Source of the DNA: Dimorphilus gyrociliatus
Lineage: Eukaryota; Animalia; Annelida
Length of the DNA stretch: 64,000 bases
Direction of reading: 5' to 3'
Assembly: GCA_904063045.1 (NCBI GenBank)
Contig: CAJFCJ010000005.1
Coordinates: 3,218,165 to 3,282,164 of the forward strand
Shown: piece by piece, positions 30,013 to 56,489 of the stretch
Numbering within the stretch: position 1 is the stretch's first letter
How the letters are laid out: every line of letters starts with the position of its first letter
Program-made: the position numbers and the translations under genes
Notes under the pieces: model-generated
The model's input: only the letters and a program-made list of their open reading frames with translations
What the model was told of the DNA's origin: nothing
Database searches by the model: none

Positions 30013-30417
30013 TTATTTCCCCATTTTAATAGGTGTACAAACTTCTATTAAGAAACCGTTTATATCACGAAGATATCCCACCTTTTGACCCCACGGTTTC
30101 TCAATAACACTCTCTGCCAACGTGGCTCCAGCGTTTAAAGCCTGTTGAAAATCTTCATCAATATTTTCAGTTGTAAATGCCAATTCAATACCAAAAGCCT
30201 TTTGATCAAGTGAGCTATGTTGAAAACTATTACCAGACTTTAAATTTTGATTAGCTAATTCAAAATTAGCGAAAGATATTGTTGTTTCACCAGAAATTAA
30301 TTCACCATAATCATTCTCCCCAGTTACAAATTTCTCCTTAAATCCAAAAGCATTTTTATAAAATTCAATTGTTTTTGGAACGTTTGCAACATAAAGAATA
30401 GTATACGCAAATTTCAT
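30013..30417 (-). CDS. Bacterial-type VOC/glyoxalase-bleomycin resistance family protein, intronless (HGT candidate)
   Basis: 134 aa with YTILYV..TIEFYKNAFG, DYGEL.SG.TTISFA, GIELAFTT and KPWGQKVGYLRDINGFLIEVCTP, which are classic bacterial VOC-fold motifs. Confidence 0.9.
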   Translation of the reverse strand: MKFAYTILYVANVPKTIEFYKNAFGFKEKFVTGENDYGELISGETTISFANFELANQNLKSGNSFQHSSLDQKAFGIELAFTTENIDEDFQQALNAGATLAESVIEKPWGQKVGYLRDINGFLIEVCTPIKMGK

Positions 30418-37775: not shown

Positions 37776-38370
37776 TTTTTACTTTAAGAAACATTTGTTC
37801 CACAAGACCGATGTGGAAAATTATATTATCGCTCAAGGAAATCTGGTAGCTATTCTATTAGTCATTCGGTGAATAAACTCTATAAAATTGGTATTAAAAT
37901 CCTAAATACTATCACATATTTTTACAATTACCACTTAATATTCAACACATCTGAGAAGTTTATAAAGTTTTCTTTCTTAGAAATAAGATAAAAGTCAAAC
38001 TCTAACTGCTTTATCATTTAAGTTGATAAACATTGAAAATTATTGTATAAAAGTTTAAAGAACACTACACAAACTCATAGAACAAATAAGTTAACAAATA
38101 TAAATTCACAGATAAATAGCATAAAAGCTCTAACAGAAGATTTGTTATTATTACATAAGATTGGTAAGTATACACTTTTTTTCATTATTAGAAACATTTC
38201 AAGCAACAAACAAACAGGATCATATTTGTTTGTGTGTTTAAGTTATTCTTTTTTGTTAATTCTTAAAGATATAACTTATTCCTTCATGTTATAAAATAAT
38301 GAATAATATACTAATAATATCTTCTTCCGTTTCTCATCCATCCTCCTTGCCCTCTCTACTACTCTTTCCT

Positions 38371-40611
38371 TTATTTTTTAAGCAATTTATCATGAAACGC
38401 AATCAATGTTAAAATTAGTTTCCTGTTGCTTATATTCCTGCTTTGTACATCATTAAGACATCCTTCCATAGTACTATTTAAACAATCAATATAATAGTTT
38501 AGGTATTTGCGTAATCGATCAATCATATTAGTGTTTATTCTATTATCTTGGTTTCTTTTGAATATATATTGAAATTCCTTTATTGCTTCTGTGAGATTTA
38601 CCTAGAAAATTGAACAAAAGAGAAAAAATTGAATATTTAGAATGATAAACAATTAATATATAGAATAATAGTAAATATAATAATACAACATTTTCGAATA
38701 TATTCAAGTGGGATAGATGTTGAAAGAGCAAATCACAAATTGTTAAGTTTTCTTCCATCCATTTTAAAACGAGTACATATCTATCAGAATTCACTAGAAA
38801 GAGAATATTCAATATAATATATGTTTGATATACGAGATAGAACAATTCCAAGACTTACTAGAGCTATAACTTTCATGGAAACAAATTTCCTAGAAAAGAG
38901 GACAATTTATTTGTTATTTAGATCAATGAAAAACTAATCAAACTTACATTACGTATATCGTAGAAAATTTTAAAAACTAATTGTAGTATTTTCCATTTTG
39001 GAATCACCTGATATTGAAAAAGATAGAGATAATAAAATATATTTAGTAATTAAACGTAAGGATAAGAATAAAGCTAATAAAACAAGTCACTCACCTTTTC
39101 AACTATTATCCAATTGTTTTCCATAACTTTAATTCCTTCGCTGAAAAAAGTCTTTGTATAAGTTGAAAGAACCTCTTCCTGCATGCATTGTGCAAAGAAA
39201 ATAATAAATTTTCCTAAATAGTATCTATTCTTGGAACATTCCAATAATCGATTGAGAAAATTCGAATAAATTTCATGGAATAGAATTTCAACTCTTTCAT
39301 TACGACGGATACTTTTTCTACCATTTAAAACTTCCAAGTGAACCTAGAAATCGTTTAATAGTAGACTCAAAATTTTGAATGTTTTCACAATTAATAATGC
39401 CTACTACCTCCCATATTGTATTGTAAAAGTTTTCCATACTCGTACAATTAGCTATAGAGTTATTATTCATCAATTCGTAGAGTTTATTCACAAGATAGAA
39501 ACTTTCTCGTCCTTTTAAACGTTTGGCAAGCATCAATACACTTTCAGGATTAATTATGTCTTTTGACTATAAAAATTGAATGAACTATAAACAGTATATA
39601 TACTAATAAATAGAAGTTTAATCTTTTTAACCTCTTTATACTCTTCTACGTAATGTATTTCTATATTAAAATTATTTTCTTTATCATAAATAAAACTCTC
39701 ATCGAACGAAGTAAAATACAAAAACTTTAAACTGGATTTAAAGATTTCTAAGCTTCTATAATGGGAAATAAATTGATTTAGAAAAACAATATTCCTATTA
39801 TACTAAACCTTTTCTTTAGATCATTTAACCAATCTTCTATAGAATTTGGTACAACAATCGTTATCTCTTCCAATTGAACTCTTTTATCTAGTAAGTACTT
39901 TATACAATCAAAAAACGTAGTATTTTTAGGATTTGTGAATGTAATGCTTAATTTATTCAAGTATTTCAAATTTTTTAAATCTTTAAAAGTATTGAATTCT
40001 TTTCCATTAAATTTTATCTTCTCATCTTTATTCTTATATCTTTCTGTCTTTCTATTTACCTTATATTTAGTATCGTACGAAATATCTTCCAAATTCATGA
40101 CGGTAAAGTCTGTCAAGTTAACGAGTTCTGAGCATATTAATTGAAATTTATCATATTTCATAATTATATTTCGTATATGTAGACTAGTTAGAGATTTAAA
40201 CATTTGACATGTTTGTCTTTTCAGATCGAATGAATTATCTTGAAAGGAGATACTAAGATTTTGAAGATGTTTAACATTAGTAAATTTAGAAACATCTTCC
40301 AAAGTGTTTCCGGCTCGAAAGTTGATTAATCGAAGATTTTCAATAGTATACCTTTTTAAAAAGTATAAATTTTTAATATTATATATCTTTTGACAATTGA
40401 GATTTAGTTGTTTTAGTTGTAATTTTATTGTATTTAAAAGGATTAAATCATTATCAGTAACTCCATTATTTAGCTCATCCAAAAATTCAATTATATCATG
40501 ACAGATAGTAAATGGAAGAATAATATCAGAATAACCAATAAATCTTTGAACATCTGAGAAATTGAACGCAATGAATCGAAGAGTAATTTGCATTAAAGTT
40601 AAAAATGGCAT
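38371..40611 (-). CDS. LRR + helical-repeat protein, ZYG-11/ZER1-like family, copy 3
   Basis: MPFLTLMQITLRFI..ILPFTICHDII; LRRs; paralogous exons (IYSNFLNRLLECSKN, YLNYYIDCLN..KLLKK*). Confidence 0.75.
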
Positions 40612-40926
40612 ATCTATCACTAGAAAAATGTAATGAAAAGCGTTTTTTTTGAAAAACTTGAGCAGTTATATCTGTTTGTCCTGAATTAAGTAGATATTAA
40701 AGTTAAATAACATGACTCATTTAACCTTTCGTACAGTTTGACTTGTTACGCCTTTACATTATTTATCTTTAAATATTAATCTATTTTCTATTAAAACTCA
40801 TATGATTTTATACGAAACCGTTTATTTTAAACGTTTAAATCCTCTACAGTTTATAACTTACGTAATAAACACTTAGGAACTATATATAAGTTGCATATAT
40901 ACATTATTTATATACAGTATATACAG

Positions 40927-40953
40927 TATATATATATATATATATATATATAT
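40927..40953. repeat. (TA)n microsatellite
   Basis: An uninterrupted TATATA run. Confidence 0.9.
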
Positions 40954-41009
40954 GCATTGAAATAATCGTCATTAAATAAACAAAAACACAAAAATATCTC
41001 ATTTTTCAT

Positions 41010-43250
41010 TTAATAGTTTAAATCCTTCAATATTTCTTCATTATATAACATCAACGATGAAATAGCGTCTTTATTACTAAATTTCTCGGCTGTTATATTA
41101 TCAATAGGCTTTCCTGTAACCTCTCTTATACAGGATATATAATAATTCAAAAATGTACGTAAACTAGCAACCAAATCATTGTGAATATAATCTTTTCGAT
41201 TCCTTGCGAAAAGTTCTTGAAATTCTCTTACAACTACATGCAATTGGACCTAAAAATAAAATGATTAATTGAGATTGAATAAAGAAGATTTACTTAAAAA
41301 AAGACATAGTTTAAATAGTTATAAACACCTTCCGAAAGACGTTAATTGATGAAATATAATCGAAGAGATCGTGACAAATTTTGAAGTTATCTTCAACACA
41401 ACTTACAATAGTTCGAATATGATTTTCGCTTACTGAAAAAACGATTAGATTAATATTTCAAATTAATGTTAAGTATTGTTAATAAAAACGGTATCTTACG
41501 AGATCGTCTTGCCATTTCCACATCGCAGTAACAGGCTTCCTTTGGAAACGTGCATACATACAGTATTATATTTTATATATATATATATTTAAAGAGAATG
41601 ATTTAATAATACTTGAAGAAAAATACTTACTTCGTAAATATCGTAGAAAAGTCTTACAATTAATTTAAATATTTCCCATTTTGGAAAAATCTTCAAATAA
41701 TATTAATAAATTGTATTATTAATATTCAATTAGTTAGATTTAAGGTAGCAAACCTGTTCAACTAAACTCCATTTTTTATCGAGAATTGTAATTCCACTAA
41801 AGAATACTTCGAATGAATCTGTTGCAAAACGTTGTTCGTGGAACCATTCCATTAGGACAATAATTAATTGTCTTAAACGATATTCGCTTTGTGAACATTC
41901 CAACATTCGATTTAAAAACTCTAAATAGATATCATCGTGAAAGAGACCAACGCTATTATTATCGTTCTTTCGATGTTTCATCACTTCGAAATGTACCTAA
42001 AAAGAGAAAGTAGAATTTATTAAATATTACGATTTTATTAAACATTAAGATTACCTGCCAAATAATATCTAAATCCTTATCGGTATTGTTATTATTCAAT
42101 GCATCGGTAATCATACCACGAAGTTTAAGAAAAAAAAATGAACTTTCATGACCTTTTAAACGACCTACAAGCGCCAACAAATATTCAGGATTTGTTATAT
42201 TTCTTGACTGTAACAATAAAAAGAATTTCATTGATCTATTATCTAGTTAATATATTATTACCTCGGTATAATTTTCGAAATTCTTACTATTAATAGTTAA
42301 ATCATTTTCTCTGTCATATATAAAACATCTATCGCTTGAACTAAAATAGGCAAATTTGAATTTTGAACTTGAATCTTCCAATGTTCTGTGTAAACGAAAA
42401 AACGTAGAAACTTTTAATAAATTTCTTCTTTTTTTCAACTAAACTACCTTTTCTTCATTCTATTCAACCATAATCTATTAGTATGTATTACTGTTATTTG
42501 TATTTCTTCTAATTTATGCCTTTTATCAAATACGTAATTTTCACAGTGTAGTATATGATCTAATTCTAATTTTTCAAGTGTAAGATGTAATCTCTTTAAA
42601 CGACGTAATTTTAATAAATCTTTAAATGTATATATCTCAAGATCTCTTCTATAGAATGATCCATTTCTTTTGTCGTAATATTTTTCATATCTTCTACTTC
42701 TTCTATAAAGATTATCTTGAGAAATATCTTCTAAATTCATAATGGATAACTCTTCTAAATTTTTTAACTCTTCGCATATAATTTGAAATTTATCACTCTT
42801 TATAGGACTATACATAATTTCTAATTTAGTTAAAGATCTAAACAATTTACAAGTATTTCTCTTTAGGTCGAAAGTAGGCTTTATTGCAAACATCGAAAGC
42901 TTTCTTAGCGAACCTAAATTGATAAATTTCAATATGTCATCCAATGAATTAATATGTTTAAGATCACTTATACGAAAATCTTTGATCTTATACTTTTTAA
43001 AGAAACTAAGACTTTCAATATTTCTTATCTTTTTACAATTGATACTTAAACTTTTCAATTGAAATTTAATTGTAGCTAAATGTTTGATATCTTCATCAGT
43101 CATTTTTTTATTTAAACTAAGTAAAGATTCCATTATTTCTTGGCTTAGAGATAATGGTAGAGTACCAGAATTACCAAGCACTCTTTGAATATCACATAAA
43201 TTTTGTGAAATAAATTGAAGTGTTAGTTGTTTCAAAGATGAAAACGACAT
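41010..43250 (-). CDS. LRR + helical-repeat protein, ZYG-11/ZER1-like family, copy 4
   Basis: MSFSSLKQLTLQFI..TLPLSLSQEIM; LRRs; paralogous exons (IYLEFLNRMLECSQ, FLNYYISCIRE). Confidence 0.75.
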
Positions 43251-43870
43251 CTTTATTATCTGTAAATAAACTATTTCAATCTCTATGACATTGAAATTAC
43301 CCCAGACGGTCTGGAAACAAAAAAAAATATCTACCAAATTTTTTTTCTGTCAACGAGTCTTACAATGTGTTAAAGCGGATGTACAATATGCTCTGTGATA
43401 GAACTCAGAGCGACTTGACACATTTTATTGTATAGGAACGCAGAAAAAGCCGTTATCCGAACTCATTGGTCATTGACCGTTAAATTTACTAGTATAGTCA
43501 ATTTTTTTATTACGTATAAGCATATATTCAAATCTACATTTATGAGATATTCTATAAATATTACTAATACTAAAATAAGAACAAGTAGTTCATGTATCTC
43601 TTAATTGAAATGGATTTTTCGTTTTTTACAACAAAGTTATAATCTAATTGGTAATCAATTATATATATGAACATCTATATAATTATCAAATTAAGAAATC
43701 ATTTTACATCTATTTAGGTCAAAATACTGAAATTAAAAATTCATAAATAGGCTTTAATTTGTTTTAAAAGAAAATAATTTTATTAATTTATAATTATCTC
43801 TTTTGTTCTATTAAAGCAATAAAATGAAAAATATACCACTTTAATTTTAGTACAACGTAACTTTTACAAG

Positions 43871-44977
43871 ATGATCAAGATGTTTTTATACGTAATTTAC
43901 ATTCTACAATTGAAGTATTATTCTCATTCACTATCTAATCCGCTAGCTAAAACTACATTTGATGGTCTAATTCATGGCAGTCATGCTAGCATACTTTTTA
44001 AACTTTCAAATAGTAATACGCAATATTACGTATATTCTACTGACTATGAAGTTATATCAAGTAATTTTCCTACAAGTAAATCAATACTTAAAAAGGGAAG
44101 CGCAGCTTTTCTAAGTTTAGGAGAACGTAACAATTGTTTTGGTAGTGTGGGAGCATGTTCTAATGGTTTTACCTTTGCAATTTGGTTGAAATTTTACGAT
44201 TTTGCTATTCCACAACAAATTATATTTGAAAATGGTAATATTGCAAAAACCAATAAATTTTTTGTAATAATAAGCAAAATTGGAACAAAATATACTGTAT
44301 ATTGTTTAATAACTGATAAAGACGGACAGTTTATCTACGTTGAAGGTATTGTAAATTCTTTAGAATGGTTTCATTTGGCCATTACATTTGACAGATCTCG
44401 TAAAGAAGCATTTATGTATATAAATAGTATTGAAGTGAATAGATATATGTCGAATATTACACTATACAATTATATTGGTTCAGAAATAGGTTCTGTTAAA
44501 CTTCTTAAACATTTTACGGGCTATGTTGACGAGTTAGCATTTTGGGATAGACAATTATCTGGCGACGAAATAAAAAATCTCTATCTTTCATTTTTCAATA
44601 ACCATGATTGTATTACATTACATCCGACAATTAAAGAAAATGAATGTAAATATGTAACTGAATGGTTTGATAATTCAGAAGATACGTGCTTTTCACCCGA
44701 ACGATTAACTAATAAATTCTGTACTGGATTAGTTAGTGAAAATTTCCAGATAAAGATTGCCTATAAGGGAAATATTACAAAAGATATTTGCCAACAGCAA
44801 AATTTATTAATAAGTCGTTATGATAATTTATTTAGTGAATGTCTATTGAAAAGCGTTTCATTTGGAAATTCAAATTCATATTGTATCTATAATTGTCAAT
44901 GTAAATATCACTTTTGTCAATTAGTTTTCATACATAGTCGAAATGTTATGAATATATGTGAAATTATATTCATGTAA
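43871..44977 (+). CDS. Probably secreted LamG/concanavalin-A-like domain protein with a Cys-rich C-terminus, single exon
   Basis: Hydrophobic N-terminus; LSLG..NCFG....CSNGFTFAIWLK, WFHLAITFD, MYINS and FTGYVDELAFWDRQLSGDEIKNLY are LamG_3 motifs. Confidence 0.8.
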   Translation: MIKMFLYVIYILQLKYYSHSLSNPLAKTTFDGLIHGSHASILFKLSNSNTQYYVYSTDYEVISSNFPTSKSILKKGSAAFLSLGERNNCFGSVGACSNGFTFAIWLKFYDFAIPQQIIFENGNIAKTNKFFVIISKIGTKYTVYCLITDKDGQFIYVEGIVNSLEWFHLAITFDRSRKEAFMYINSIEVNRYMSNITLYNYIGSEIGSVKLLKHFTGYVDELAFWDRQLSGDEIKNLYLSFFNNHDCITLHPTIKENECKYVTEWFDNSEDTCFSPERLTNKFCTGLVSENFQIKIAYKGNITKDICQQQNLLISRYDNLFSECLLKSVSFGNSNSYCIYNCQCKYHFCQLVFIHSRNVMNICEIIFM

Positions 44978-45334
44978 TTAAATAGAATGATTCAATTAAA
45001 CGTTGCCCTTTTGAATTTATTATACTTTTTACTAAATGAAAAAGTAAAAACATGGTAAGAGCTGATGTAAACAGTTAAAGTTTGTTATTATTTTTACCTG
45101 TAAATAGGACACTTTTACTTGTTAGAGAACATTGACTTATTACTCACAAAAGACATTTACATTGACTAAAAATATATGCTTATTCTATTCATAAACAAAC
45201 TTGTGTAACCAACTTCATAACCACACAATCTTAAAAATACAATTTTACCAGTTTTCTTTGAACGATAAATCAGATTGTAAAAAACCCACATCGAACAACA
45301 ACTTACAACTAAACTTTTACCGGAATCGGTAAAA

Positions 45335-47395
45335 ATGTCGATTTTTAATTGTAATCTGTGTAAAAGTTTATTTAAATATCGATATTATCGAAATTTTTAC
45401 AAGTTTATTAGAAATTCAAATAGTGGCTCATCTATTTCTCTGGGTGCGCAAACTATTTTATCTGCAGCTCAACTCAATCATAAGGTTACCGATAAAGATT
45501 TGAACCTGCTTAATCAGTCTGGATCTAAATTGCAAAAATTCAGTATTAATCTAAACGGCATACAAAAACCTGAAAGTTTAAAATTCTTAAAAGATCATCC
45601 ACTGGAAAAACTTGAATTAAAAAATTTCGATGTTCTATATAATCTAAAAGATATTGAAGATTTTATAAATGTTGAAAATTTAACGGAACTTAATCTTACA
45701 TCGCTCTCCTTATCATTTAAATTGAATAGTTCAACATGCAGAAGATTAAAATCACTTAAAAAATTAAATTTGAACGATACAAGACTCGATGATGAAAATT
45801 TTACAATACTTTGTAAAGAATTACCAAATCTTCAAAATTTACAGCTTAAAGCATCGAAAATAAAAAATGAAAGTGTATTAATGGAATTGAAAAAATTACA
45901 AAGTTTACATTTCGACAATGGTTACAACTCTTTGAAACGTCTTCATAACATTCTAATAGAATTAAAAAACTTTAAAGAGCTGGTATTAACTGGAAAATCT
46001 GAAATAAACTTTGACGCTGTAAACAGAATCTTTTTTGAATCTAATTGGCATTTGGAGAAGCTTATTGTCAATGTAAAACACGGAAAATGGTTAGAATGTT
46101 TAAGTAAACGGTTAATTATTTTTTTCTTATTAAATTTTTATATACAGTATATTCTATCAACTTTAATAATATTTCATCATTTTAGAAATCTAAGCGTTGA
46201 AAAGCCTAATTTGAAATTTTGCTGTTTGTATTCTTCTCAAGGAATATTCCTATACGATGGAAAGAATATCATAAAATTCACTTCTGATGATCCTAATAAA
46301 TACGAACAGGTATTCAATTCTTATTTTCTATATGAAGAAAATGTTCTACGTCTAATAATACTGCATTTATTCAATAGATAAAGGAATTGAATGATCCTTT
46401 GTATGTCTTGAATCTAGCTCAACATTTAAAAGGATGTGGAGATTCTTTTATTGTTTATACTTTACAAAGAATGTTGGATTTAGCTGAAAAAGATGATTGG
46501 GACGATGAAAAATTGAATATAATTTGGAAGGTAAAACGTAAAGAAATGGCGATATATATATATTGAAATAATATTACATTCTCTTCACAAAAGATCATAT
46601 TTGCTATGGTTGATATAGAAAATCAAGATTCTACATGGATTTTAAATAATCCTTATTCAACAGATTATCTTAAATTAATTAATAGAATGGAAAACTATTC
46701 AAAGAATGACTTTTTTTGGATAAAAACAGTTGAATCTTGCTGCAGAATTCTCTATTCTTCTAGCATAAATTTCGGATTTAAACAATACTATTCCGAAGCA
46801 ATGAAAATAATCTGTAAGAAATGGGATTTACAAGATAAAGTAGGCCAGCTTATGATTTACTAAAATATTGTTATTGTTAGTTGTTTGTTTTTTGAATAGG
46901 TATTCAAGAAATATAAAATGTTTCGAGTGTACTTGAGATTTTTTATTGCTATAACTGAGGTAATAATATGATCTTATGAATATTCATTAATATTATATTT
47001 GTTTCTTCTATTCCAATATTTTTAGCAATTAAATCCAAAAAATTCCTCATTTTATACAGGTAAATATACATAAATACTGTATATATTTTCTAGAAAAGCA
47101 TACATTATTTGTATTGTATTACTTATTTAATTAAGATCTTGGTCAAGTAGAACTTTGCGTTCAAGAATTATTAAAAGTTCACGAATTACTATTTGAAAAA
47201 ATTGGAAAAGATAATTTTTTAGATAGAGCATCAATTTCTGAAACGCTTAGAGAAGTTAGAAAAATTGAACAATTGCTTTTCAATTGGAATATTCAAATTG
47301 AAGATGAACAATTACAAAATTGTAGAAAATCACTTGAAAATTATTTTAACACTTGTGTTTTAGATTATCTTAAAACTATTGAAAAATCAATATAA
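45335..47395 (+). CDS. LRR + helical-repeat protein, ZYG-11/ZER1-like family, copy 5 (divergent N-terminus)
   Basis: KVTDKDLNLL, LKFLKDHPLEKLEL, LKSLKKLNL, FFESNWHLEKL, exon 1 ending ..SKR|, and YLKLINRMENYSKNDFFWIK all match the paralogues. Confidence 0.75.
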
Positions 47396-47831
47396 GTATG
47401 GGTATTTTTGGATTAAAGTTTCATATAACCATACGCCTGGCTAAGAATTGGAATTCACTTTCTAATAACTGACCTCATTTTTTATTTGATTTCCAACGAA
47501 ATGTTTACGAATCAAATTAAAAAGTATGATTATTCGTCTATTGCTTATAGAATTTTGTATTAACCCTATTAAATGACATAAATTTATTAGCAGTAATAGT
47601 GTACTAGGTGGAAATATGTTTTAATATTTCACGGGCTTCTACTTTCGATTAGCAGGTAGAATATGATTCGTTTGCTAAATAATAAAACAAACATTCAAGT
47701 CAAGTGTTTGTTTGTAATTTAATATTGTTTTTATTAAGAATAGCAATGGACTTTGTCTACTTACTTAGATGAGTTTTCCCCGGAGAGTTAACTTCTCTAT
47801 ATCTATCTTTCATAGTTCGAATTTATTTTTT

Positions 47832-47975
47832 GTTAAGTAGATATTTGATAAGATTTTCAGATGCTTGAAAAAAATGAATAGTTTTTATCCAGAAGACACA
47901 AGGATTGACATTCTTCAATTATCATCTTAAACAATCGTCAATATTTTCTAATGGAGAATTGAAGAAATTTTCAAA
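47832..47975 (-). pseudogene. Possible decayed exon of the LRR/helical family
   Basis: Translates FENFFNSPLENIDDCLR**LKNVNPCVFWIKTIHFF, resembling WILNNPYSTDYLKLINRMENYSKNDFFWIKT of copy 5, with two in-frame stops. Confidence 0.3.
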
Positions 47976-48261
47976 ATTGAATTAAAATCTTAATAAAGCT
48001 CATAATTGATGAGTAGTGTCAAGAGCCCAGATTTAAGACGAAATTAAGACTAGATAAATGTCAATACGAAGAATGAAGAATAAGATACTAATCTAAAGAT
48101 TTCAAGAAAAGTGTCACTATCCAATAACCAATAATGTTCTTTGGTGTTTTTTTCTTTTGTGGAATCTAAGAGAAAGGATAAAAAGTAATATTTCTTTTAT
48201 TAGCTTCATTTATTACATTCATAAGAAAATGACATGAAAAGGGAAAGAATTGTAAAGAAGG

Positions 48262-49559
48262 TTAATTGTAATCGTAACTGAATAAATACTCCGGATAACA
48301 TTGGAGACCGTTGTACACGACATACTCCGATCCATTCCCAATTATACTATCAAAGGTCTTTTTATGATCCACATTTTCGCATGAAGTGTTCTTGCAGGTC
48401 TTGCAAGGAGGCGTTGTAAAAGATTTTCCTGCGTGTGACGTGGAATCATAAGCAACTCCTAGAAGAACTCTCGATAGAAACATATACCGAGGATTTTCTG
48501 AACCGGTGTAGTGATGGGAGAATTTTGGACTATGGGCGTGATAAATACCTTTTCCAAACCAACCAGAACTTGCGACTCGATTATCAAATCCTTTATTTGT
48601 AATTATAAGAGCTTTATTACGAGATGTACCATGAAATAAATACTTTTCATTAATTTCCAGCCTTAAATATTGTCGAAGAGTACTAGGAACCATCAAATCG
48701 ACGGCAGTTTCCCGAAGTTTTATTTTCTCTTTTGTCGAACGTTTTAGCAGGTTTTTACGTTCTGTTGTATAATTTGAAAAGATTTGCGGATTTTCTATCC
48801 TAGTTATCTCTCTAACTGTTATATTTGCATCTGATTCCTTACTTAGATCTTTCCAAGCTTTTAAGAAGAATTTTTCCATTTCACTATATTCAAAAAGAAG
48901 ATTATTGAAAAAATGATAAGAGTTTTTCAATTTTTCATACTTGAATAGATATCCTTCTTTGTTTTTCAAGAAGACAACTTTAGGTTTAGTCTCAAATATA
49001 TCATTCAAAGGACCATAAAAACAAGACCAGTTTTCAGGAGTTTCGTCACACATATCGATTTTCTCCTTTATGAAAAGGAGAAGAAACAGTTAGAGTTATC
49101 ACTCATAACAATAATGATATTATACCTTAATATTCCTGTCATAGTGAGAGTTCATAAGGGAATCTGTTCAAAAGTAAATTATGACAGGAAAAATTTGAAT
49201 AAAAGACTCATTATTGCTGTAAAAATTTAAATCAGTTACTATATCTATTACTTACGAGAAGTTTGTGGTCTGTCAAAAGACAAAGGCAGATTCTGTCTAT
49301 CTGTATCAAATGCTAATTAAAAAAAACTATCATCTTCTATGATAGTAACAGTAAATATAGTATATTATTTATACCTGGCGGATAGCTGTAATAATTTGCC
49401 AAAATTGGATTTTGTTTGTCTATAGAACCACTGAAAATGATTAAGAACATAAAGAATATAGTTTCACTTGTATTCTGGATTATATTACCTTGATCGATTG
49501 GTTCGTCTCGAATTTAGAGGAAATAAAAAGATTTTTGACATATTGAAATTAGAATTCAT
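48262..49559 (-). CDS. Small PARP-family ART with an H-Y-E triad; 5' exons uncertain and possibly extending to about 50.3 kb
   Basis: ITRIENPQIFSNY, NEKYLFHGT, GWFGKGIYHAHSPKFSHHYT, YMFLSRVLLG, FDSIIG, SEYVVY..QCYPEYL. Small phase-compatible exons lie upstream to ATG 49559. Confidence 0.88.
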
Positions 49560-51098
49560 TTGCAAAAATTTTCACTGCATCAAATTAACTAGTAAACAAT
49601 AAACCATGGTTATAAAGAAACATAATACGTAATGGTTATTATTAAGCAACTGTTCATAATTTGAGTAAGAATAATAAGTGGAATAGGGAAGAGCCTGCTT
49701 AACATTTTCGTATACCAGTTTAAAATGTTCTTGAATATTAATTAATTAAATTATATGCAGTTTATTATTAAGCTTCCAATATTTTCTCACTAAGTGATCT
49801 TAGCCTCTCTCTCTCTCTCTTTTCTGTGGAGAATTCAAAATGGAAGCTATTTAGTTAGAAACTGTATTTCTTTGAAGACAATATAAAAACAAATTAAATC
49901 GTATGTTAAATTGATAATTGAATGTTACATAATAATAATATTTATACTAACCGTACTCGATACGTATGGGATAAATAGCTAAGAGAAATAGATATAATAC
50001 ATATACATAACTCTCTTAGTTCAGCCGTTGCGTTTGGTACTGATGACGAAATTTTTAAATCATCTTTTGAGAGAAGTCTAGTTGAATTTGGAAATTTTAT
50101 TTGTAATCTTAACGGTTACGATGGATTTTTCACGTAGACGGAATAAAAATTAAAGGCTTTGTATTACGTCTATACACCCTTTTACTTTACAGTCGTATAT
50201 AGTTTCTGGGATGATAAGGATAATTCAGTAGGCTCTGTTCGATTTCGATATAGCTCTAGACGCTGCTCATACACATAATACAACAAAAAAGAAATATTAA
50301 ATTTAAAATGAAGAAAATGACATATTCTACATTTATAAGCATCTCTTATTCTGTTTCTTTGTTTCTCTCTTTTAGTATGTTTTAAAACGTATATTGTTGT
50401 TCATTAAATATGAATCTCTTCTTATATAATCTTATCCTAATACAAGAGATAAGATATATGACGTCATTTAAAAATTGATGGAATGGTTGTTCACCGATAA
50501 AAACAATAACCGTATTTAAAGGAATATATAAAGTATAAATAAATTGAATTTTGTATCTGACCAGCGTATCATCTTACCCAATCGATTAAAAACATATAGA
50601 AATCTTATTTTCTTTACTGTGATTTATTTAAGATATTCACCAAATTAAAAACGGCTAATGGTCAATGTATAATCAGTTAAAATTTATCTTTATCAGTAAA
50701 AAATCTCTATTTAATATCGTAAAACTCTGCATTTATAGTATTACGCGTGCGCAGTGGATTCTGATTATTATCTAGAGATAGAAGCCTATTAGTTACTTAT
50801 ACCGAGATGAAAGTGAAATCGATCGCATAGCCCTTAGGACAAGAATTATAATATTATATATTAATATTGTATTATCAAACCTTGTTTTATCTTTATCAAT
50901 GATATGCTGATATGAGTACTAAAACCATTAAAGAAACAAATAAGAGATTCCAAATCAAAGATGTTATATATTTATTATTAGGTACTTTTTATTGATAATT
51001 TTTGATAGTCACGTGTTTGTATCTGTGGCCTATTATATAAAAAATATTATCTATATAAGTCCTTTGAGACGTACTAATTATTAAAGTATGCAGCAGCA

Positions 51099-52265
51099 AT
51101 GAAATTAAATGAGCACATTGTAAAAGGGATTGAAAAAGATATTTCTCCTTTCTATTATTACGATTTAAAGGTTTTAGAGGAGACTTTAATGACTGTGAAG
51201 AATGAATCTTCAAAATATAATTACAAAGTACATTATGCTGTAAAAGCAAATTTTAATCCCAAAATTATGCGTTTAATTTCCAATTATGGCTTTGGAGCTG
51301 ATTGCGTAAGTGGTAATGAAATAATTCATGCTTTAAAAATGGGATTTTCAAGTAATGACATCGTTTTGGCTGGTGTTGGAAAAACTGATAGAGAAATTCG
51401 TTTGGCATTGGAAAATAATATATTTTGTCTGAATGTTGAATCTTTGGAAGAATTGAAAATAATTAATAATATTGCTCTTGATATGGGAAAATTTGCTCCT
51501 GTAGCTCTTCGATTAAATCCTAATATTAATGCAAAAACACACCATTATATTACAACTGGTTTGTCAGAAAATAAGTTTGGAATACCTTTAACAATGTTAG
51601 ATAACATTTTGGATGAAATACAAACAATGGATAATATTTATTTGAAAGGATTACATTTTCATATTGGTTCTCAGATAACAGACTTAACCGTGTATGAAGA
51701 TCTTTGTAAGCAGGTTAATGAAATACAAATTGACTTGGAAAAGAGAAACATTAACTTGGATCACATAAACGTTGGTGGTGGATTGGGGATTAATTACAAT
51801 AATCCAGATGATAGTGAGGCTTATAATGTTTCTAATTATTTTGCATTATTTGATAAATATTTGGATAAAAGACCAAACCAAAGTTTACACTTTGAAATTG
51901 GTCGTTCGATTGTTGGAACTTGTGGATCGTTAATTACAAAAGTTCTATTCGTAAAAAAAGGTATACAAACAGATTTTGTGGTAGTCGATGCCGGAATGAC
52001 AGAACTCATTCGTCCAGCACTATATCAATCATATCATCAAATAAATAATCTAAGTTCACTTGATGAAAGTTGTAGATACCATGTAGTAGGTCCAATTTGC
52101 GAGAGTTCCGATTGCTTTGGTAAGAATATTATTTTACCAAAGACAAGAAGAGGAGATATAATTGCAATTCGTAGTGCAGGAGCCTACGGACAAGTGATGT
52201 CCTCCAGATATAATCTTAGGAGTACAGCTCCAGCTCTCTATAGTGATGGTACGTGGGAAAATTAA
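51099..52265 (+). CDS. lysA: Diaminopimelate decarboxylase, bacterial type, intronless (HGT candidate)
   Basis: 388 aa with PFYYYD, HYAVKAN (PLP Lys), GADCVSGNE, GVGKT, NVESLEEL, TTGLSENKFG, HFHIGSQI, NVGGGLG, EIGRSIV, DAGMTELIRPALY, VVGPICESSD and AGAYG..MSSRYN. Confidence 0.95.
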   Translation: MKLNEHIVKGIEKDISPFYYYDLKVLEETLMTVKNESSKYNYKVHYAVKANFNPKIMRLISNYGFGADCVSGNEIIHALKMGFSSNDIVLAGVGKTDREIRLALENNIFCLNVESLEELKIINNIALDMGKFAPVALRLNPNINAKTHHYITTGLSENKFGIPLTMLDNILDEIQTMDNIYLKGLHFHIGSQITDLTVYEDLCKQVNEIQIDLEKRNINLDHINVGGGLGINYNNPDDSEAYNVSNYFALFDKYLDKRPNQSLHFEIGRSIVGTCGSLITKVLFVKKGIQTDFVVVDAGMTELIRPALYQSYHQINNLSSLDESCRYHVVGPICESSDCFGKNIILPKTRRGDIIAIRSAGAYGQVMSSRYNLRSTAPALYSDGTWEN

Positions 52266-52905
52266 AATAACGAATATTTTTTATTTCTAGTTTGTATTGT
52301 TTGGTTTTGTTTTATAAATTGTAAACTCAATTCTTTGCAGTATTATATTAATATTTAATGCAAAATATACTGAATAATCTACTGCATATATTTAAAATTT
52401 GTCACAACAAAACTCTTATTAATTTAATAGTAATTAGTTGTTAATAAAATGAAACTATGCCAGGATATACCGTATGAAAGTAACACACGTAGATTACGTA
52501 CGGTTATTACAGAGATATCATTGACCCAAGGAATTGAACGATTAAGATAAGATAGAAATATTACTCATATATTAGTATCAATAGTCTAATATTGAATCAG
52601 ATCTCATAAATATCAATATCAAATCAGAGTAGCCGAGAATATAAAACAACATCTGTTTTAGATTTTTACAGTTTTACAAGAAATATTCTATATTTACTTT
52701 TGGTAAAAGTAATATTGCAGTTTTACAGTTATAATTCTTGCAAAAGGGGCCTTAAAATTATACACAGTACAAAAACAATAGGCTCTTATGTTTTCTTGGC
52801 TTGTTATTGGTTCAGATTAATGCATTATAAAAAATTCTATTTATTTATTTAAATATAGTCTATAAATGGGCAAAATTGCAATCACAAGCACTTTCACTCT
52901 ACAAC

Positions 52906-53655
52906 ATGAATAAGTTGAAAACGAAAATATCCATAATAATTTTGATGATAATTATTCATTCGTCTAATACCTCAAATACTTGTTCATTAAGGAAAGTTGG
53001 TTTTGATGACAAACAACTATTTCCAGACTCAATTTTCACGGATAAAGATCATTTTTTAACTCCAGCAAGGGCAGCAAGAATGAAACCAACTGCAGGTGTT
53101 TGGTTAGCTTCTAGAGTACCTGGAAGTTGGATTCAAGCAGACCTATGTTAGAAGTAAAATTTCATACAATATAATATTACTTTAAAATGTTGTACAAATT
53201 GTAGTGCGTATCTATGATATATATGGAATAGATATGAAAGGTGGTGATGCAACTAGGTATACTACCAATTTTCATCTCATGTATGGACTCTCCACATCTT
53301 CATTAGTATATTTTAAAGAAGGAAGCAGTAAGAAGGTCTCGTCTATACTATAAATAATTTTTATGTATAATTGTAATTTGAATTTTGGCATTGTTGTAGG
53401 TTTTTAAGGGAAATATTGCATCTAACTGGAACCAATTAATTCATGTGACATTCCCGCAAAAAATTGTAACAAGATATATTAGAATACTTACAAGATCTGG
53501 TAGCCTCTATGCTGGAATTGCTTTCGAACCCTACGGATGCCGTAAGTTATCTTTAATAGATAATACTTACAATTTTTATCATATAAACATATTTTCATTT
53601 TAATTATATTAAAAAAGACAAGACAAACGCATTTCAACTATCTAACTATTTTTAA
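52906..53655 (+). CDS. Secreted single F5/8 type C (discoidin) domain protein; last exon tentative
   Basis: Signal-like KISIIILMIIIHSS; ARAARM..GVW..SWIQADL|..IYGIDMKG..YTTNFHLMYG..|VFKGN..TRYIRI..FEPYGC. Confidence 0.8.
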
Positions 53656-54359
53656 TACTAACAAACAACAAGTCAGTCTTTCTATAACACAGTTACTACA
53701 CTCTATAGTGAATAATAAGCTACTAATAAATAAACTATAAAGATTCACTTATATTCAGTATAAATTACTAACTACTGACGTATGATATTCCACTTAGGTG
53801 ACGAAAATAACTAAGAAAAAATCAATTTTTATACATTAAAGGTTAAATTATTTTATCTGTTAGGCCTATATTTTGACGTTATTAAATTAACCTCATTTAG
53901 GGTGAAAAATAACATCAATACCATTGCCAAACTGTATTAGAATTGAGAAGTTTTAAATGTTTTTATTATTATATAATCAACGTATACAAAGTAAGCACAA
54001 GAGTTTCATATATATATATATATCAAATACATGTATAAATATCTTCGACAATTGAAGACAAAAGCGAAATGAGTATATTTCTTTCAAAAAAAGAAAAAGA
54101 AAGAAAGAAAGAAAACCCGATAATCTCCCAAATCTCTGTCGTAATTATCCCAATTGGGTCAAATGTTACAAAAAAAATAATTCAGAGATTCCACTCAAAG
54201 AGAAGTATTTTTTTTAAGTGTTGCAGTTTTTTTCATCGTAGAGTGTGAATCGTTTAATGGACAATTAAATAATTCAAGAGTATTGAATAAAATAGATTCA
54301 GGATCCAAATGAAAATAATTCCTTCTTATTCAGCAATAATGGTAATATTTATAATTAGC

Positions 54360-56489
54360 TTAATTTTTATAGCCGTTAAATCTGTTTGTATACCGAAAGA
54401 GAAAGTTTGAATCTGAAGATAGCCATTGTTCGTGGGATACCAACTGTGGCGACTTTTCAGCTTGAATGCTATTTGATTGCTGCGTGTGATCCGGTTCTGG
54501 TGTTGCATTAGACTGTGGAGCATAGCTTGGCTCCTCAGTATAATTTGGTTCTTCTTGTGTATAGTAGTTTGCCTCTTGGATATAATTTGCTTCTGGCTCT
54601 AAATCTGCTTCAGGAAGGTTACTCGACTCTTGTGGAAAATTTGGCATTGAAGTTGAATACGGCCCTTGTGCGTAATCTATTTCGTATGTATAAGTTAATT
54701 CTTGCATGTAATTAGGACCTGGAGTTGAATGCAATTCAGATGGGGTCGTTTCTTGCTCCGAATCTGTTTCTTGACCAAAGGTCACGTAATTAAAGAAATC
54801 TGGTGTTTGTATGCGCAACATTTCTTGTTCGTGATTGAACGTCAGTTCTTGGAAATTGTGCTGTGGTGTGGAAAGCAACTCTCGAGGAAAACCGAAATCG
54901 TCGGTGACGTTTAGCTCTTGCGAAATAATTGATTCTTCTGCGGATAGTGCTTCTGATGATAAATTCGGAATAATTAGAGATTCAAGACTACGAGAATTGG
55001 AAAAATCATGTTCGCCAATTTTCGTTCGTTGGGATATTTGCATATCGGTAAACTCATTCGTTTTCCTCTTTCTACAGCCAGCGTCTTTTGATGTAGAAGA
55101 GTCCCACTGTGATTCAATAAATATATTTGCAGAATTTGATGATGTTGAAGAACGAGTATTGTCATCAGCATCATAATTATCATATTCATCATATTCATCA
55201 TAATCATTATTATCATTATTATCATTATTATCATTATTATCATTATTATCATTATTATCATCATTATCATCATTATCATCACTATCATCATTATCGTCAT
55301 TATCGTCATGATCATCATCGTCGTCGTCGTCGTCATCATGACCATAATCAGTACGATTATCACCATCATCATTATCATTGTCAATATCATCATGATCATC
55401 ATCACTACAATCGCTCGAGTTGGCAGAGTACGACGTATCAGAATATGTAGGGGGCGAAAAAGACATTGTTGAGTTATCGTAAAAGTCAAGCACAGCTATT
55501 GTCTCTGAAAAGACTCTTCCAGTATGCGTCTGTGGTGAAAGAGTGTTAATACTATTTTCGTCCGACTCAATTGAAGGTTGAGCAGAATACTCTGGAGAGT
55601 TGCGTTTATGATGGGAAATTTCTTTTTTCGAAACATGATATTGCCCATTATAGAAACTTCGAGTGTTGATTTGAGATAAAGCCGATCGCTTTCCAGTAGT
55701 TTTACTCTTTTCAACAGTTTCCTTTTTTTTAGTATTTGATTGTCTCCTATACTGCGATTCTTGGTTTGTATTGGAGTTTTCTTTCATTTTGTAAAAATCG
55801 TTACAAAAGTCGTCTAAACGATTTCCCATTACTTTCAATTCATCGTAGAGTCTACTATTCTGCTCTATCAACTTATTATTCTGGTTGATGATAACGTTAT
55901 AGTTCAAGTCTTCCATGGAATTAGAAAATACGCATCTTCGGTTAGAACTTTCACCTTTTGGCTGTATATATAGCTTTTGTACGCCATTAATGGTCAAATT
56001 TAAAATTTGAAGAGAAAATGGCGAAATTTTTGTCGATGGGGTATTACGAGGTCTAAATATTACGGGACTATCTTCACTCAATTCTTTTCTAACAAGTTTC
56101 CAATTAGATTTAAGGATATTTTCCAAAATTTCTACGGTTCTAGACAAAGCCGCTTTCGAACCAACAGGAAGTGAGCAAATAGGAAACAATCTAACAAAAA
56201 TTCTACCACACTGACGAATATGTGTCGATAGATTGTCACAATGGTCATTTTCCCTTTTTAAAGAACAGAGAATCCTACTGAATCTAGTACTTAGGGATAG
56301 AGCTGTATAATTAGTAGACAAAAAGGAGCACCTCTTACAAAAAACCACAAAGCAAACGCCTCTTGTTTTACAGGTGAAGTCATCGTTGATGTTGACAGTA
56401 ACTCTACCATCACTTGAACACCATCTTGAACAGCAAACCAAATGAACGCACAAAGGACATTTAGCGATTGAGCACTTTCGAACACCCAT
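54360..56489 (-). CDS. Intronless 709-aa protein: degenerate Penelope-type GIY-YIG/Cys-rich N-terminal domain, predicted coiled coil, and long acidic low-complexity tail
   Basis: Uninterrupted 2.1-kb ORF. The N-terminus KCPLC..INDDFTCKTRGVCFVVFCKRCSFLSTNYTALSLSTRF..LSTHI follows the PLE endonuclease pattern CxxC..I...FTC.T.NVIY.I.CxxC..YIG.T...L..RF..H. No reverse transcriptase is visible nearby. Confidence 0.7.
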   Translation of the reverse strand: MGVRKCSIAKCPLCVHLVCCSRWCSSDGRVTVNINDDFTCKTRGVCFVVFCKRCSFLSTNYTALSLSTRFSRILCSLKRENDHCDNLSTHIRQCGRIFVRLFPICSLPVGSKAALSRTVEILENILKSNWKLVRKELSEDSPVIFRPRNTPSTKISPFSLQILNLTINGVQKLYIQPKGESSNRRCVFSNSMEDLNYNVIINQNNKLIEQNSRLYDELKVMGNRLDDFCNDFYKMKENSNTNQESQYRRQSNTKKKETVEKSKTTGKRSALSQINTRSFYNGQYHVSKKEISHHKRNSPEYSAQPSIESDENSINTLSPQTHTGRVFSETIAVLDFYDNSTMSFSPPTYSDTSYSANSSDCSDDDHDDIDNDNDDGDNRTDYGHDDDDDDDDDHDDNDDNDDSDDNDDNDDNNDNNDNNDNNDNNDNNDYDEYDEYDNYDADDNTRSSTSSNSANIFIESQWDSSTSKDAGCRKRKTNEFTDMQISQRTKIGEHDFSNSRSLESLIIPNLSSEALSAEESIISQELNVTDDFGFPRELLSTPQHNFQELTFNHEQEMLRIQTPDFFNYVTFGQETDSEQETTPSELHSTPGPNYMQELTYTYEIDYAQGPYSTSMPNFPQESSNLPEADLEPEANYIQEANYYTQEEPNYTEEPSYAPQSNATPEPDHTQQSNSIQAEKSPQLVSHEQWLSSDSNFLFRYTNRFNGYKN
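55161..55405 (-). repeat. Coding low-complexity trinucleotide/9-bp repeat tract (Asp/Asn-rich: DDN, DNN, YDE)
   Basis: Arrays of tcattatta, tcattatca and tcg on the + strand. Confidence 0.9.

What the first reader, a model, noticed from the sequence alone, without database searches (positions are those of the whole stretch)
51099..52265. Intact bacterial lysA in an animal chromosome
Seen: an intronless full-length ORF with all PLP/catalytic motifs (HYAVKAN, HIGSQ, GGGLG, CESSD, GAYG), no bacterial operon neighbours, spliced animal genes within 0.6-1.5 kb on both sides, and AT-rich codons like the neighbours. Knowledge: most animals lack the DAP lysine pathway; lysA HGT is described in sap-feeding insects. 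The short N-terminus and motifs resemble Bacteroidetes LysA as I recall them. Inference: if the host eats bacteria, LysA alone could turn meso-DAP from ingested peptidoglycan into lysine and perhaps remove a DAP-type immune elicitor, without needing the upstream pathway.
Basis: partly seen in the sequence, partly recalled or inferred. Interest (0 to 1): 0.8.

Follow-up and report, generated by a model that had tools for sequence, protein, structure and literature searches.

The report
Bacterial lysine-making gene kept by annelids
The tiny marine worm Dimorphilus gyrociliatus carries, expresses and has long conserved a gene for the last enzyme of bacterial lysine synthesis, acquired from marine Bacteroidota, which may let it turn a cell-wall component of bacteria into the essential amino acid lysine.

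Summary
Window 51099-52265 (+) is an intact, intronless 388-aa ORF. It passes NCBI's LysA equivalog model (394 bits, cutoff 297.9), folds like solved DAP decarboxylases (TM 0.89) and keeps every named catalytic and meso-DAP-binding residue.

The host is the annelid Dimorphilus gyrociliatus; the identical protein is the unnamed DgyrCDS3857.

It is neither contamination nor a relic:
- RNA assemblies from two studies cover the whole gene unspliced. One contig joins it to spliced exons of the neighbouring PARP gene.
- A second, unidentified relative carries an orthologue (69% aa) in the same gene order.
- dN/dS is at most about 0.09.

The two animal copies are monophyletic (100/99) and nested among Bacteroidota LysA. 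Their nearest sister is an uncultured marine Flavobacteriales lineage with a lysC-lysA operon.

Two corrections. AT-rich codon use is not evidence of amelioration, because the nearest bacterial gene is equally AT-rich. The public 437-aa model is a chimera that wrongly splices lysA into the next gene.

The physiological role is inferred, not shown: salvage of bacterial meso-DAP into lysine, as reported for rumen ciliates. No other DAP-pathway gene could be searched for. lysA transfers are known in hemipterans, corals and protists, and I found none reported for annelids. This is a new member of a known kind.

The parts
51099..52265 (+). lysA coding sequence (388 aa plus stop), intronless diaminopimelate decarboxylase of Bacteroidota origin
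   Evidence: ORF. TIGR01048 at 394 bits, above the 297.9 cutoff. Pfam PF02784 and PF00278. PDB LysA 3e-80. AF2 model with pLDDT 85.7 and TM 0.89 to 2qgh. 90 of 93 near-invariant bacterial columns kept.
50901..52412 (+). Shortest RNA contig covering lysA (run X4, 1,512 nt, unspliced), the best available estimate of the transcription unit. X2 has a longer contig, 49881-52487.
   Evidence: read-laying table 8, with zero mismatches to the window. Contigs cannot fix true 5' or 3' ends or the strand.
52443..52448 (+). AATAAA hexamer 178 nt after the stop and about 40 nt before the end of the longest RNA contig (52487): a candidate polyadenylation signal. It is tentative because such hexamers are common in this AT-rich DNA.
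   Evidence: Sequence; RNA contig ends at 52412 and 52487.
48200..49631 (-). Upstream neighbour, head-to-head: a spliced animal PARP-catalytic-domain gene. Introns are 48884-48940, 49065-49124, 49164-49255, 49313-49374 and 49431-49488. It runs on below 48200.
   Evidence: CT..AC joints in three RNA runs. PF00644 PARP 1.8e-18 on the 48262-49053 ORF. In run X3 the same 6,128-nt contig carries these spliced exons and lysA up to 52248.
52622..53887 (+). Downstream neighbour: a separate spliced gene, probably a secreted discoidin (F5/8 type C)-like protein. Introns are 53147-53204, 53334-53397 and 53542-53797. Its first exon was wrongly fused to lysA in the public 437-aa model.
   Evidence: GT..AG joints, and its own RNA contig starting at 52622. 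Weak PF00754 hint at E 0.023 on exon 3. P0001 C-terminus equals this exon.
41052..52259 (.). Block collinear and co-oriented with contig L001 of a second species, in the order multi-exon gene (-), LRR protein (-), Laminin_G_3 protein (+), LRR protein (+), lysA (+).
   Evidence: tblastn and blastn of L001 against the window. Flanking genes are 26-42% aa identical; lysA is 69% aa and 71.5% nt identical.

Best explanation
This is a genuine, old bacterium-to-animal gene transfer. A lysA gene from a marine Bacteroidota lineage entered the nuclear genome of an ancestor of Dimorphilus gyrociliatus and at least one other related worm. The nearest known sister is an uncultured Flavobacteriales lineage in which lysA sits in a lysC-lysA operon. 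In the worm the gene lost its operon context, stayed intronless, became its own transcription unit between a PARP gene and a discoidin-like gene, and has been kept under strong purifying selection.

Shown here: the product is a full-length fold-type-III PLP enzyme with no N-terminal extension, so it is presumably cytosolic. It retains the Schiff-base lysine (K49), the PLP ligands (D68, H188, S191, E266, Y363, GGG226-228) and the distal-site residues that recognise the L-centre of meso-DAP (R269, R305, and E335 from the partner subunit).

Inferred: it works as a homodimeric meso-diaminopimelate decarboxylase making L-lysine plus CO2. It is the only DAP-pathway gene that the scan's notes record in this genome, but no dedicated search for dapA, dapB or dapF was possible. 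I judge the most likely physiological role, at about 50%, to be salvage of free meso-DAP released from bacterial peptidoglycan (diet or gut flora) into the essential amino acid lysine. That conversion is reported for bacterivorous rumen ciliates.
For: Identity and competence:
- TIGR01048 scores 394 bits against a 297.9 cutoff.
- Best solved relatives are all LysA, at 3e-80.
- AF2 model TM 0.89 to H. pylori DAPDC, and the top 17 PDB hits are all DAPDC.
- 90 of 93 (window) and 93 of 93 (second species) of the columns at least 97% conserved in 158 bacterial homologues are kept. The three changes are conservative: T16S, F244V, I295V.
- The nine active-site residues named for T. maritima DAPDC in PMC8277567 all have counterparts with identical motif spacing.

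Host integration:
- 100% identity to DgyrCDS3857 on a 4.5-Mb D. gyrociliatus sequence.
- RNA contigs from three runs in two studies match with zero mismatches. The X3 contig joins spliced PARP exons to lysA.
- The window is otherwise animal: PARP, Macro, UNC-93, Laminin_G and LRR genes.

Age and selection:
- The orthologue P0002 lies in collinear context on L001.
- pS 0.72 (saturated) and dN 0.215 give dN/dS of at most about 0.09.
- Five shared animal-specific residues, including the C-terminal G-T-W.

Donor:
- The animal pair is monophyletic at 100/99 and sister to P0020/P0029 at 84/86 (95 in the quick tree), inside a Bacteroidota radiation.
- P0020 sits in a dense bacterial TARA scaffold with lysC overlapping lysA.
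- The adjacent RuvB is 85-88% identical to marine Flavobacteriales MAGs.

Role precedent:
- 'DAP is converted to lysine by protozoa' (PMC7058926).
- lysA is listed among LGTs of detritus-feeding ciliates next to peptidoglycan-degrading genes (PMC13198582).
Against: - No enzyme assay exists, and no tissue or stage localisation is known.
- RNA evidence comes from assembled contigs only, so true transcript ends, strand, polyadenylation and expression level are not established.
- DNA-read bridging failed technically: run X1 gave only 20-25-nt pieces.
- The sister relation to the TARA lineage has moderate support (84/86), and the exact donor family is unresolved.
- The second species is unidentified, so the age of the transfer cannot be dated.
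- Absence of dapA, dapB and dapF rests only on the scan's notes holding no such word. That is weak evidence.
- Releasing free meso-DAP from stem peptides needs peptidases that were not examined here.
Confidence: 0.85

Rival explanations
1. Shared-pathway model, as in mealybugs and whiteflies. The host LysA completes a lysine pathway whose earlier steps run in resident symbiotic or gut bacteria, rather than harvesting DAP from digested cell walls.
For: This is the documented use of horizontally acquired lysA in animals: B. tabaci from Planctomycetes and P. citri from alpha-proteobacteria (PMC4943190). A lone terminal enzyme fits this model equally well.
Against: The genome paper mentions no obligate symbiont of D. 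gyrociliatus. The animal is a free-living grazer (general knowledge). Nothing here can separate the source of the DAP.
Confidence: 0.15
2. Neofunctionalised enzyme. The protein is kept for another reaction (for example D-ornithine/D-lysine or another D-amino-acid decarboxylation) or for removing DAP as an immune signal, not for lysine supply.
For: Wild-type T. maritima DAPDC already shows slight D-ornithine activity, and single changes at Glu315 shift specificity (PMC8277567). Five residues are specific to the animal copies (L90, T274, G384, T385, W386).
Against: All distal-site residues (R269, R305, E335) and 90-93 of the 93 near-invariant columns are unchanged. The DokD model scores far below its cutoff, 166 against 700 bits. 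The protein lacks a secretion signal-like extension and acts on free DAP, not muropeptides.
Confidence: 0.07
3. Expressed but functionless relic: a neutral insertion that happens to remain open.
For: Many HGT candidates in animals are non-functional. The scan's unchecked note s1-080338 describes a degenerate murA in the same genome.
Against: Two lineages with saturated synonymous divergence both keep a full ORF. dN/dS is at most about 0.09, catalytic residues are intact, and flanking host genes diverged to 26-42% while lysA stayed at 69%.
Confidence: 0.03
4. Bacterial contamination or a chimeric assembly joining a bacterial read to worm DNA.
For: The gene is intronless, and the closest bacteria are equally AT-rich, so composition filters such as BlobTools would not flag it. 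DNA-read bridging could not be shown.
Against: Independent RNA assemblies from two studies reproduce the gene plus 1.2 kb of non-coding upstream sequence, and join it to spliced PARP exons. An independent DNA contig of another species shows the same gene order. No bacterial neighbour genes are present. The nearest bacterial protein is only about 60% identical.
Confidence: 0.02
5. A divergent eukaryotic ornithine decarboxylase rather than LysA.
For: It belongs to the same Pfam superfamily.
Against: ODCs match at about 1e-8 to 1e-10 against 3e-80 for LysA. It has Glu, not Asp, at the distal-amine position, and both distal Arg residues are present.
Confidence: 0

Closest known systems
Bacteroidota LysA (short-N-terminus diaminopimelate decarboxylase, TIGR01048), e.g. 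uncultured marine Flavobacteriales (TARA scaffold L044), Marinifilum, Paludibacteraceae
   Same: 57-62% identity over the full length, the same length (about 385 aa), the same domains, and all catalytic and substrate residues. The animal genes nest phylogenetically among them.
   Different: The worm gene is monocistronic in animal chromatin, has no lysC partner, lies between spliced animal genes and is transcribed in the worm. It carries five animal-specific substitutions, including a G-T-W C-terminus.
Horizontally acquired lysA of sap-feeding Hemiptera (Bemisia tabaci, Planococcus citri)
   Same: A bacterial lysA integrated and expressed in an animal genome, as the terminal lysine-pathway step (PMC4943190, PMC4607527).
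   Different: The donors differ (Planctomycetes and alpha-proteobacteria against Bacteroidota), so the transfers are independent. In the insects lysA accompanies transferred dapF or dapB and complements obligate endosymbionts. Here it stands alone in a free-living marine annelid with no known symbiont.
lysA acquisitions and DAP-to-lysine conversion in bacterivorous protists (anaerobic APM ciliates, rumen ciliates; choanoflagellate candidates)
   Same: A phagotroph of bacteria holding a bacterial lysA. Biochemical conversion of bacterial DAP to lysine is reported for rumen protozoa (PMC7058926). lysA is listed with peptidoglycan-degrading LGTs in PMC13198582, and flagged in S. rosetta (PMC7971027).
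   Different: Those are unicellular eukaryotes with intracellular digestion. This one is a bilaterian animal, and the link between gene and activity is untested in both.
Coral and diatom lysA of foreign origin
   Same: A eukaryotic lysA gained by transfer (Seriatopora entry in PMC4878875; Phaeodactylum PtLYSA, bioRxiv 10.1101/2020.10.01.322594).
   Different: The coral gene is of chlorophyll-c-algal origin. The diatom enzyme is plastid-targeted within a full DAP pathway.

Membership tests
Diaminopimelate decarboxylase LysA (EC 4.1.1.20; TIGR01048) | Scores above the curated equivalog cutoff of the family model | tested here: met
   394.1 bits against a cutoff of 297.9. All other decarboxylase models score far below their cutoffs.
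Diaminopimelate decarboxylase LysA (EC 4.1.1.20; TIGR01048) | Fold-type III PLP architecture: N-terminal TIM barrel plus C-terminal beta-sheet domain | tested here: met
   PF02784 and PF00278. AF2 pLDDT 85.7 and pTM 0.87. Foldseek top 17 hits are all DAPDC, with TM 0.89 to 2qgh.
Diaminopimelate decarboxylase LysA (EC 4.1.1.20; TIGR01048) | Schiff-base lysine and PLP ligands (Tm K46, D65, H179, S182, E246, Y343; Gly-rich phosphate loop) | tested here: met
   K49, D68, H188, S191, E266, Y363 and GGG226-228 are all in invariant columns. Residue roles are taken from PMC8277567. Correspondence is by motif and spacing, not by superposition.
Diaminopimelate decarboxylase LysA (EC 4.1.1.20; TIGR01048) | Distal site for the L-centre of meso-DAP: two Arg for the carboxylate, and Glu (not the Asp of ODC/ADC) for the amine | tested here: met
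   R269 (EIGR), R305 (LIRPALY) and E335 (CESSD), in both animal copies (PMC8277567).
Diaminopimelate decarboxylase LysA (EC 4.1.1.20; TIGR01048) | Catalyses meso-DAP to L-lysine plus CO2 | not testable with these tools
   Needs an enzyme assay or complementation of an E. coli lysA mutant.
Bona fide functional bacterium-to-animal HGT | Physically contiguous with undoubted host genes | tested here: met
   An RNA contig (X3, 6,128 nt) joins spliced PARP exons to lysA. Collinear context is seen in an independent DNA contig of a second species. Raw genomic long-read bridging was not obtained, because X1 was uninformative.
Bona fide functional bacterium-to-animal HGT | Nested within donor-group phylogeny, away from vertically inherited animal genes | tested here: met
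   the animal pair is supported at 100/99 inside Bacteroidota LysA, with a marine Flavobacteriales-context gene as sister.
Bona fide functional bacterium-to-animal HGT | Transcribed in the animal | tested here: met
   Unspliced RNA contigs cover the whole CDS in X2, X3 and X4, from two studies. The same runs show spliced neighbours, which proves they are RNA. Polyadenylation and cell type are unknown.
Bona fide functional bacterium-to-animal HGT | Maintained by purifying selection in more than one species | tested here: met
   dN 0.215 with saturated pS 0.72. 90-93 of 93 invariant columns are kept.
Hemipteran-type host-symbiont shared lysine pathway | Obligate symbiont supplying DAP and lacking lysA; host gene expressed in symbiont-housing cells | not testable with these tools
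   No symbiont data are available here, and none is mentioned in the genome paper.
Eukaryotic ornithine decarboxylase | Closest similarity to ODCs; Asp at the distal-amine position | tested here: not met
   ODC E-values of about 1e-8 to 1e-10 against 3e-80 for LysA. Glu335 occupies that position.

The most novel reading that the evidence does not exclude
Dinophilid annelids have partly escaped the animal-wide lysine auxotrophy. A Flavobacteriales-derived LysA lets them decarboxylate meso-DAP freed from the peptidoglycan of the bacteria they graze. It may work as one piece of a horizontally assembled peptidoglycan-catabolism toolkit; the scan's unchecked notes list an intron-bearing anmK and a VanX/DdpX-like dipeptidase elsewhere in this genome. 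This would be the first case of an animal making an essential amino acid from a bacterial cell-wall component with its own nuclear gene and without a symbiont.
Probability: 0.35. Interest if true: 0.75.

Novelty: new member of a known kind. Interest (0 to 1): 0.55.

Why it matters
Animals cannot make lysine. The known exceptions involve sap-feeding insects that share a pathway with endosymbionts. Here a single terminal enzyme has been kept for a long time under strong constraint in a free-living, bacteria-grazing marine worm that is a laboratory model with a 74-Mb genome. That makes a simple nutritional hypothesis directly testable in a tractable animal: lysine salvaged from bacterial cell-wall DAP. 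The case also adds a well-documented annelid example to the debated catalogue of functional bacterium-to-animal transfers. Finally, it corrects a public gene model, since DgyrCDS3857 is a lysA/discoidin chimera.

Tried and rejected
1. Composition as evidence of amelioration is rejected. The closest bacterial lysA (GC 0.29, GC3 0.17) is as AT-rich as the host.
2. DNA-read bridging failed.
3. Identifying the second species (SRR23372229 / SRR23372231) failed. Accession and Dinophilidae literature searches found nothing, and the annelid mitogenome study is not the source.
4. Remnants of the bacterial operon (lysC, ruvB, flavoprotein) around the animal genes: none found.
5. Bacterial promoter and terminator scan: 16 sigma-70-like sites against 14.4 +/- 3.9 expected, and no plus-strand terminator after the gene. 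This is uninformative, as expected in AT-rich DNA.
6. Pfam on single exons of the downstream gene gave only a weak F5/8-type-C hint (E 0.023), so 'discoidin-like' stays tentative.
7. Search for other DAP-pathway genes in the genome: only the scan's notes could be queried. They hold no 'diaminopimelate' or 'dapA' entries, which is weak evidence of absence.
8. Ricard et al. 2006 on rumen-ciliate HGT does not mention lysA or DAP. The DAP-to-lysine statement is cited from PMC7058926 instead.
9. The large representative-protein search was not run, because the family assignment was not open.

Full report
**Observation.** The five motifs quoted are all present, at residues 45, 188, 226, 334 and 361. 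Pfam finds both halves of the Orn/DAP/Arg decarboxylase architecture (PF02784 at 5.5e-53, PF00278 at 9e-26). NCBI's LysA equivalog model TIGR01048 scores 394.1 bits against a curated cutoff of 297.9, while every other decarboxylase model stays far under its cutoff. Among solved structures the best matches are bacterial and archaeal LysA (3vab at 3e-80, and more than ten others). Plant LysA scores about 1e-56 and eukaryotic ODCs only 1e-8 to 1e-10. An AlphaFold2 model built on a 30-sequence alignment (pLDDT 85.7, pTM 0.87) matches DAP decarboxylases in the first 17 Foldseek ranks, with TM 0.89 to H. pylori DAPDC 2qgh.

**Host.** The word-index protein search returned a 100% identical protein, DgyrCDS3857 of Dimorphilus gyrociliatus, on a 4.5-Mb sequence. 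This is the miniature annelid with the 73.8-Mb genome (PMC7854359). The rest of the window is animal-like. It is 25-35% GC and holds PARP catalytic and macro domains, UNC-93, a Laminin_G_3 protein and a tandem LRR family. The genome paper never mentions lysine or DAP. Its only 'horizontal gene transfer' occurrence was not among the passages shown to me, so I did not see its context. Searches combining DAP decarboxylase, HGT and annelids found no paper.

**Is it really in the animal, and is it used?** I laid four public runs on 48200-54150.
- Three runs (X2 and X4 from a 2020 study, X3 from a 2017 study under another organism label) are RNA assemblies. Their contigs carry canonical splice joints in both neighbours: five CT..AC introns of 57-92 nt in the minus-strand PARP gene, and three GT..AG introns of 58-256 nt in the plus-strand downstream gene.
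- In all three runs lysA is covered end to end by unspliced contigs with zero mismatches: X4 at 50901-52412, X2 at 49881-52487 and X3 at 49489-52248.
- The X3 contig (6,128 nt) continues from lysA into the spliced PARP exons. This ties the bacterial-type gene to an intron-bearing animal gene in a data set independent of the genome assembly.
- In X4 the intergenic stretches on either side have no or only thin contigs, so the pattern is that of a discrete transcription unit rather than genomic DNA carry-over.
- Contigs cannot give true ends, strand or level. An AATAAA at 52443-52448 lies about 40 nt before the end of the longest contig, but in this AT-rich DNA that is only suggestive.
- The fourth run (X1, probably the source DNA) gave only 20-25-nt fragments, so genomic read bridging remains untested.

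**Gene model.** The public 437-aa model drops the last three codons (W-E-N) plus the stop. It uses a GT at 52253 as a donor to splice into the first coding exon of the next gene. No RNA contig shows that joint. The lysA contigs end at 52412-52487, and the downstream gene has its own contig starting at 52622. The orthologue in the second species also ends ...DGTWEYKK. The 437-aa model is therefore a chimera of two genes.

**A second species.** The next-best database hit (P0002, 389 aa, 69% identity) comes from Logan assemblies of SRR23372229 and SRR23372231, on an 18.7-kb, 27% GC contig.
- That contig (L001) is collinear and co-oriented with window 41.0-52.3 kb. The shared order is a multi-exon gene, an LRR protein, a Laminin_G_3 protein, another LRR protein, then lysA.
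- The flanking proteins are only 26-42% identical, and non-coding DNA does not align. This is a clearly different, fairly distant relative. I could not name it.
- Between the two lysA copies, synonymous sites are saturated (pS 0.72) while dN is 0.215. dN/dS is therefore at most about 0.09.
- Of 93 alignment columns that are at least 97% conserved in 158 bacterial homologues, the window copy keeps 90 (T16S, F244V and I295V are the exceptions) and the second species keeps all 93.
- The two share five residues almost never seen in bacteria, including the C-terminal G-T-W.
- Monophyly, synteny and shared derived residues together indicate one transfer before the two lineages split, followed by long purifying selection.

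**Donor.** All named close relatives are Bacteroidota or neighbouring FCB lineages: Marinifilum, Adhaeribacter, Flavobacteriales, Paludibacteraceae, Marinilabiliaceae, Rikenellaceae and a Chlorobiota MAG.
- In a 160-row quick tree and a 58-row LG+C20 tree the animal pair is monophyletic (99; 100/99). It is sister to P0020/P0029 (SH-aLRT 95; UFboot/SH-aLRT 84/86) inside a poorly resolved Bacteroidota radiation.
- P0020 lies on a TARA Oceans scaffold packed with bacterial genes. Aspartate kinase overlaps lysA's start by one base, and RuvB, cytochrome oxidase, an alternative complex III and Omp28 are nearby.
- The RuvB beside P0029 is 85-88% identical to uncultured marine Flavobacteriales MAGs.
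- The best current statement is therefore 'marine Bacteroidota, nearest to an uncultured Flavobacteriales lineage'.
- That lineage's lysA has GC 0.29 and GC3 0.17, against 0.31 and 0.21 for the worm gene and GC3 of 0.18-0.30 for host ORFs. AT-rich codons therefore say nothing about amelioration.
- No trace of lysC, ruvB or the flavoprotein gene survives near either animal copy.

**Catalytic competence.** The engineering study of T. maritima DAPDC (PMC8277567) assigns these roles: Lys46 forms the internal aldimine; Asp65 and Glu246 act on the pyridine nitrogen; His179 stacks on PLP; Ser182 and Tyr343 bind the phosphate; Arg249 and Arg285 bind the distal carboxylate; and Glu315 binds the distal amine. 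ODC and ADC carry Asp at that last position. By motif and identical spacing these correspond here to K49, D68, E266, H188, S191, Y363, R269, R305 and E335. All lie in invariant columns. Both animal proteins start and end within a few residues of their bacterial relatives. There is no presequence, so a cytosolic location is the default inference.

**Mechanism and role.**
- Shown: an intact, expressed, constrained LysA-type gene.
- Inferred: it decarboxylates meso-DAP to L-lysine as a dimer.
- LysA needs free meso-DAP. The scan's notes for this genome record no other DAP-pathway gene (weak evidence). The substrate most plausibly comes from bacteria, either digested prey cell walls or resident microbes.
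- Precedents: rumen protozoa convert bacterial DAP to lysine (PMC7058926). A 2026 survey lists lysA among genes laterally acquired by detritus-feeding ciliates, beside peptidoglycan-degrading enzymes (PMC13198582).
- In hemipterans, acquired lysA instead completes a pathway shared with endosymbionts (PMC4943190). That rival cannot be excluded here.
- The immune-elicitor idea is unlikely for a cytosolic enzyme that acts only on free DAP.

**Verdict.** This is a real and well-supported bacterium-to-animal transfer of lysA. It is old, expressed and under strong constraint. It is new for annelids as far as the searchable literature shows, but it is of a kind already known from insects, corals and protists. 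The interesting, testable part is the possible symbiont-free salvage of lysine from bacterial cell-wall DAP. 

Noticed in passing
window 52252-52265 and 52876-53151: The public protein DgyrCDS3857 (437 aa) is a chimeric gene model. It splices lysA, minus its last three codons, into exon 1 of the neighbouring discoidin-like gene. No RNA contig supports the joint, and the two genes have separate RNA contigs.
   Followed up: yes
window 30013-30417 (-): An intronless 134-aa ORF with Glyoxalase_2 / VOC domains (5e-13) lies between macro-domain genes. Only the Pfam assignment was checked.
   Followed up: partly
window 49489-51098: RNA contigs run continuously across the 1.4-kb spacer between the head-to-head PARP and lysA genes (X3 fully, X2 from 49881, thin contigs in X4). 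This could be a long or alternative lysA 5' UTR with several upstream ATGs, divergent promoter transcripts, or an artefact of unstranded assembly.
   Followed up: no
window 32206-46381 and L001 452-7763: A tandem family of roughly 265-350-aa LRR proteins and a Laminin_G_3 protein is syntenic between the two species but only 26-42% identical. This is far faster evolution than the adjacent lysA. In the window, but not in L001, a PARP gene sits between this block and lysA.
   Followed up: partly
window 54360-56489 (-): A 709-aa ORF with a long Asp/Asn-rich low-complexity tract has no Pfam hit.
   Followed up: no
L044 3370-5840: In the closest bacterial relative (uncultured marine Flavobacteriales, TARA scaffold), lysC and lysA overlap by one base. 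This is a tight operon of which only lysA reached the worm.
   Followed up: partly
other pieces of the same genome (scan notes s1-082428, s1-084888, s1-080338, s1-081136): Unchecked scan notes list an intron-bearing anmK, a VanX/DdpX-like dipeptidase, a degenerate murA and another intronless bacterial-type PLP decarboxylase in this genome. Together with lysA these might form a peptidoglycan-salvage set. None could be examined from this window.
   Followed up: no
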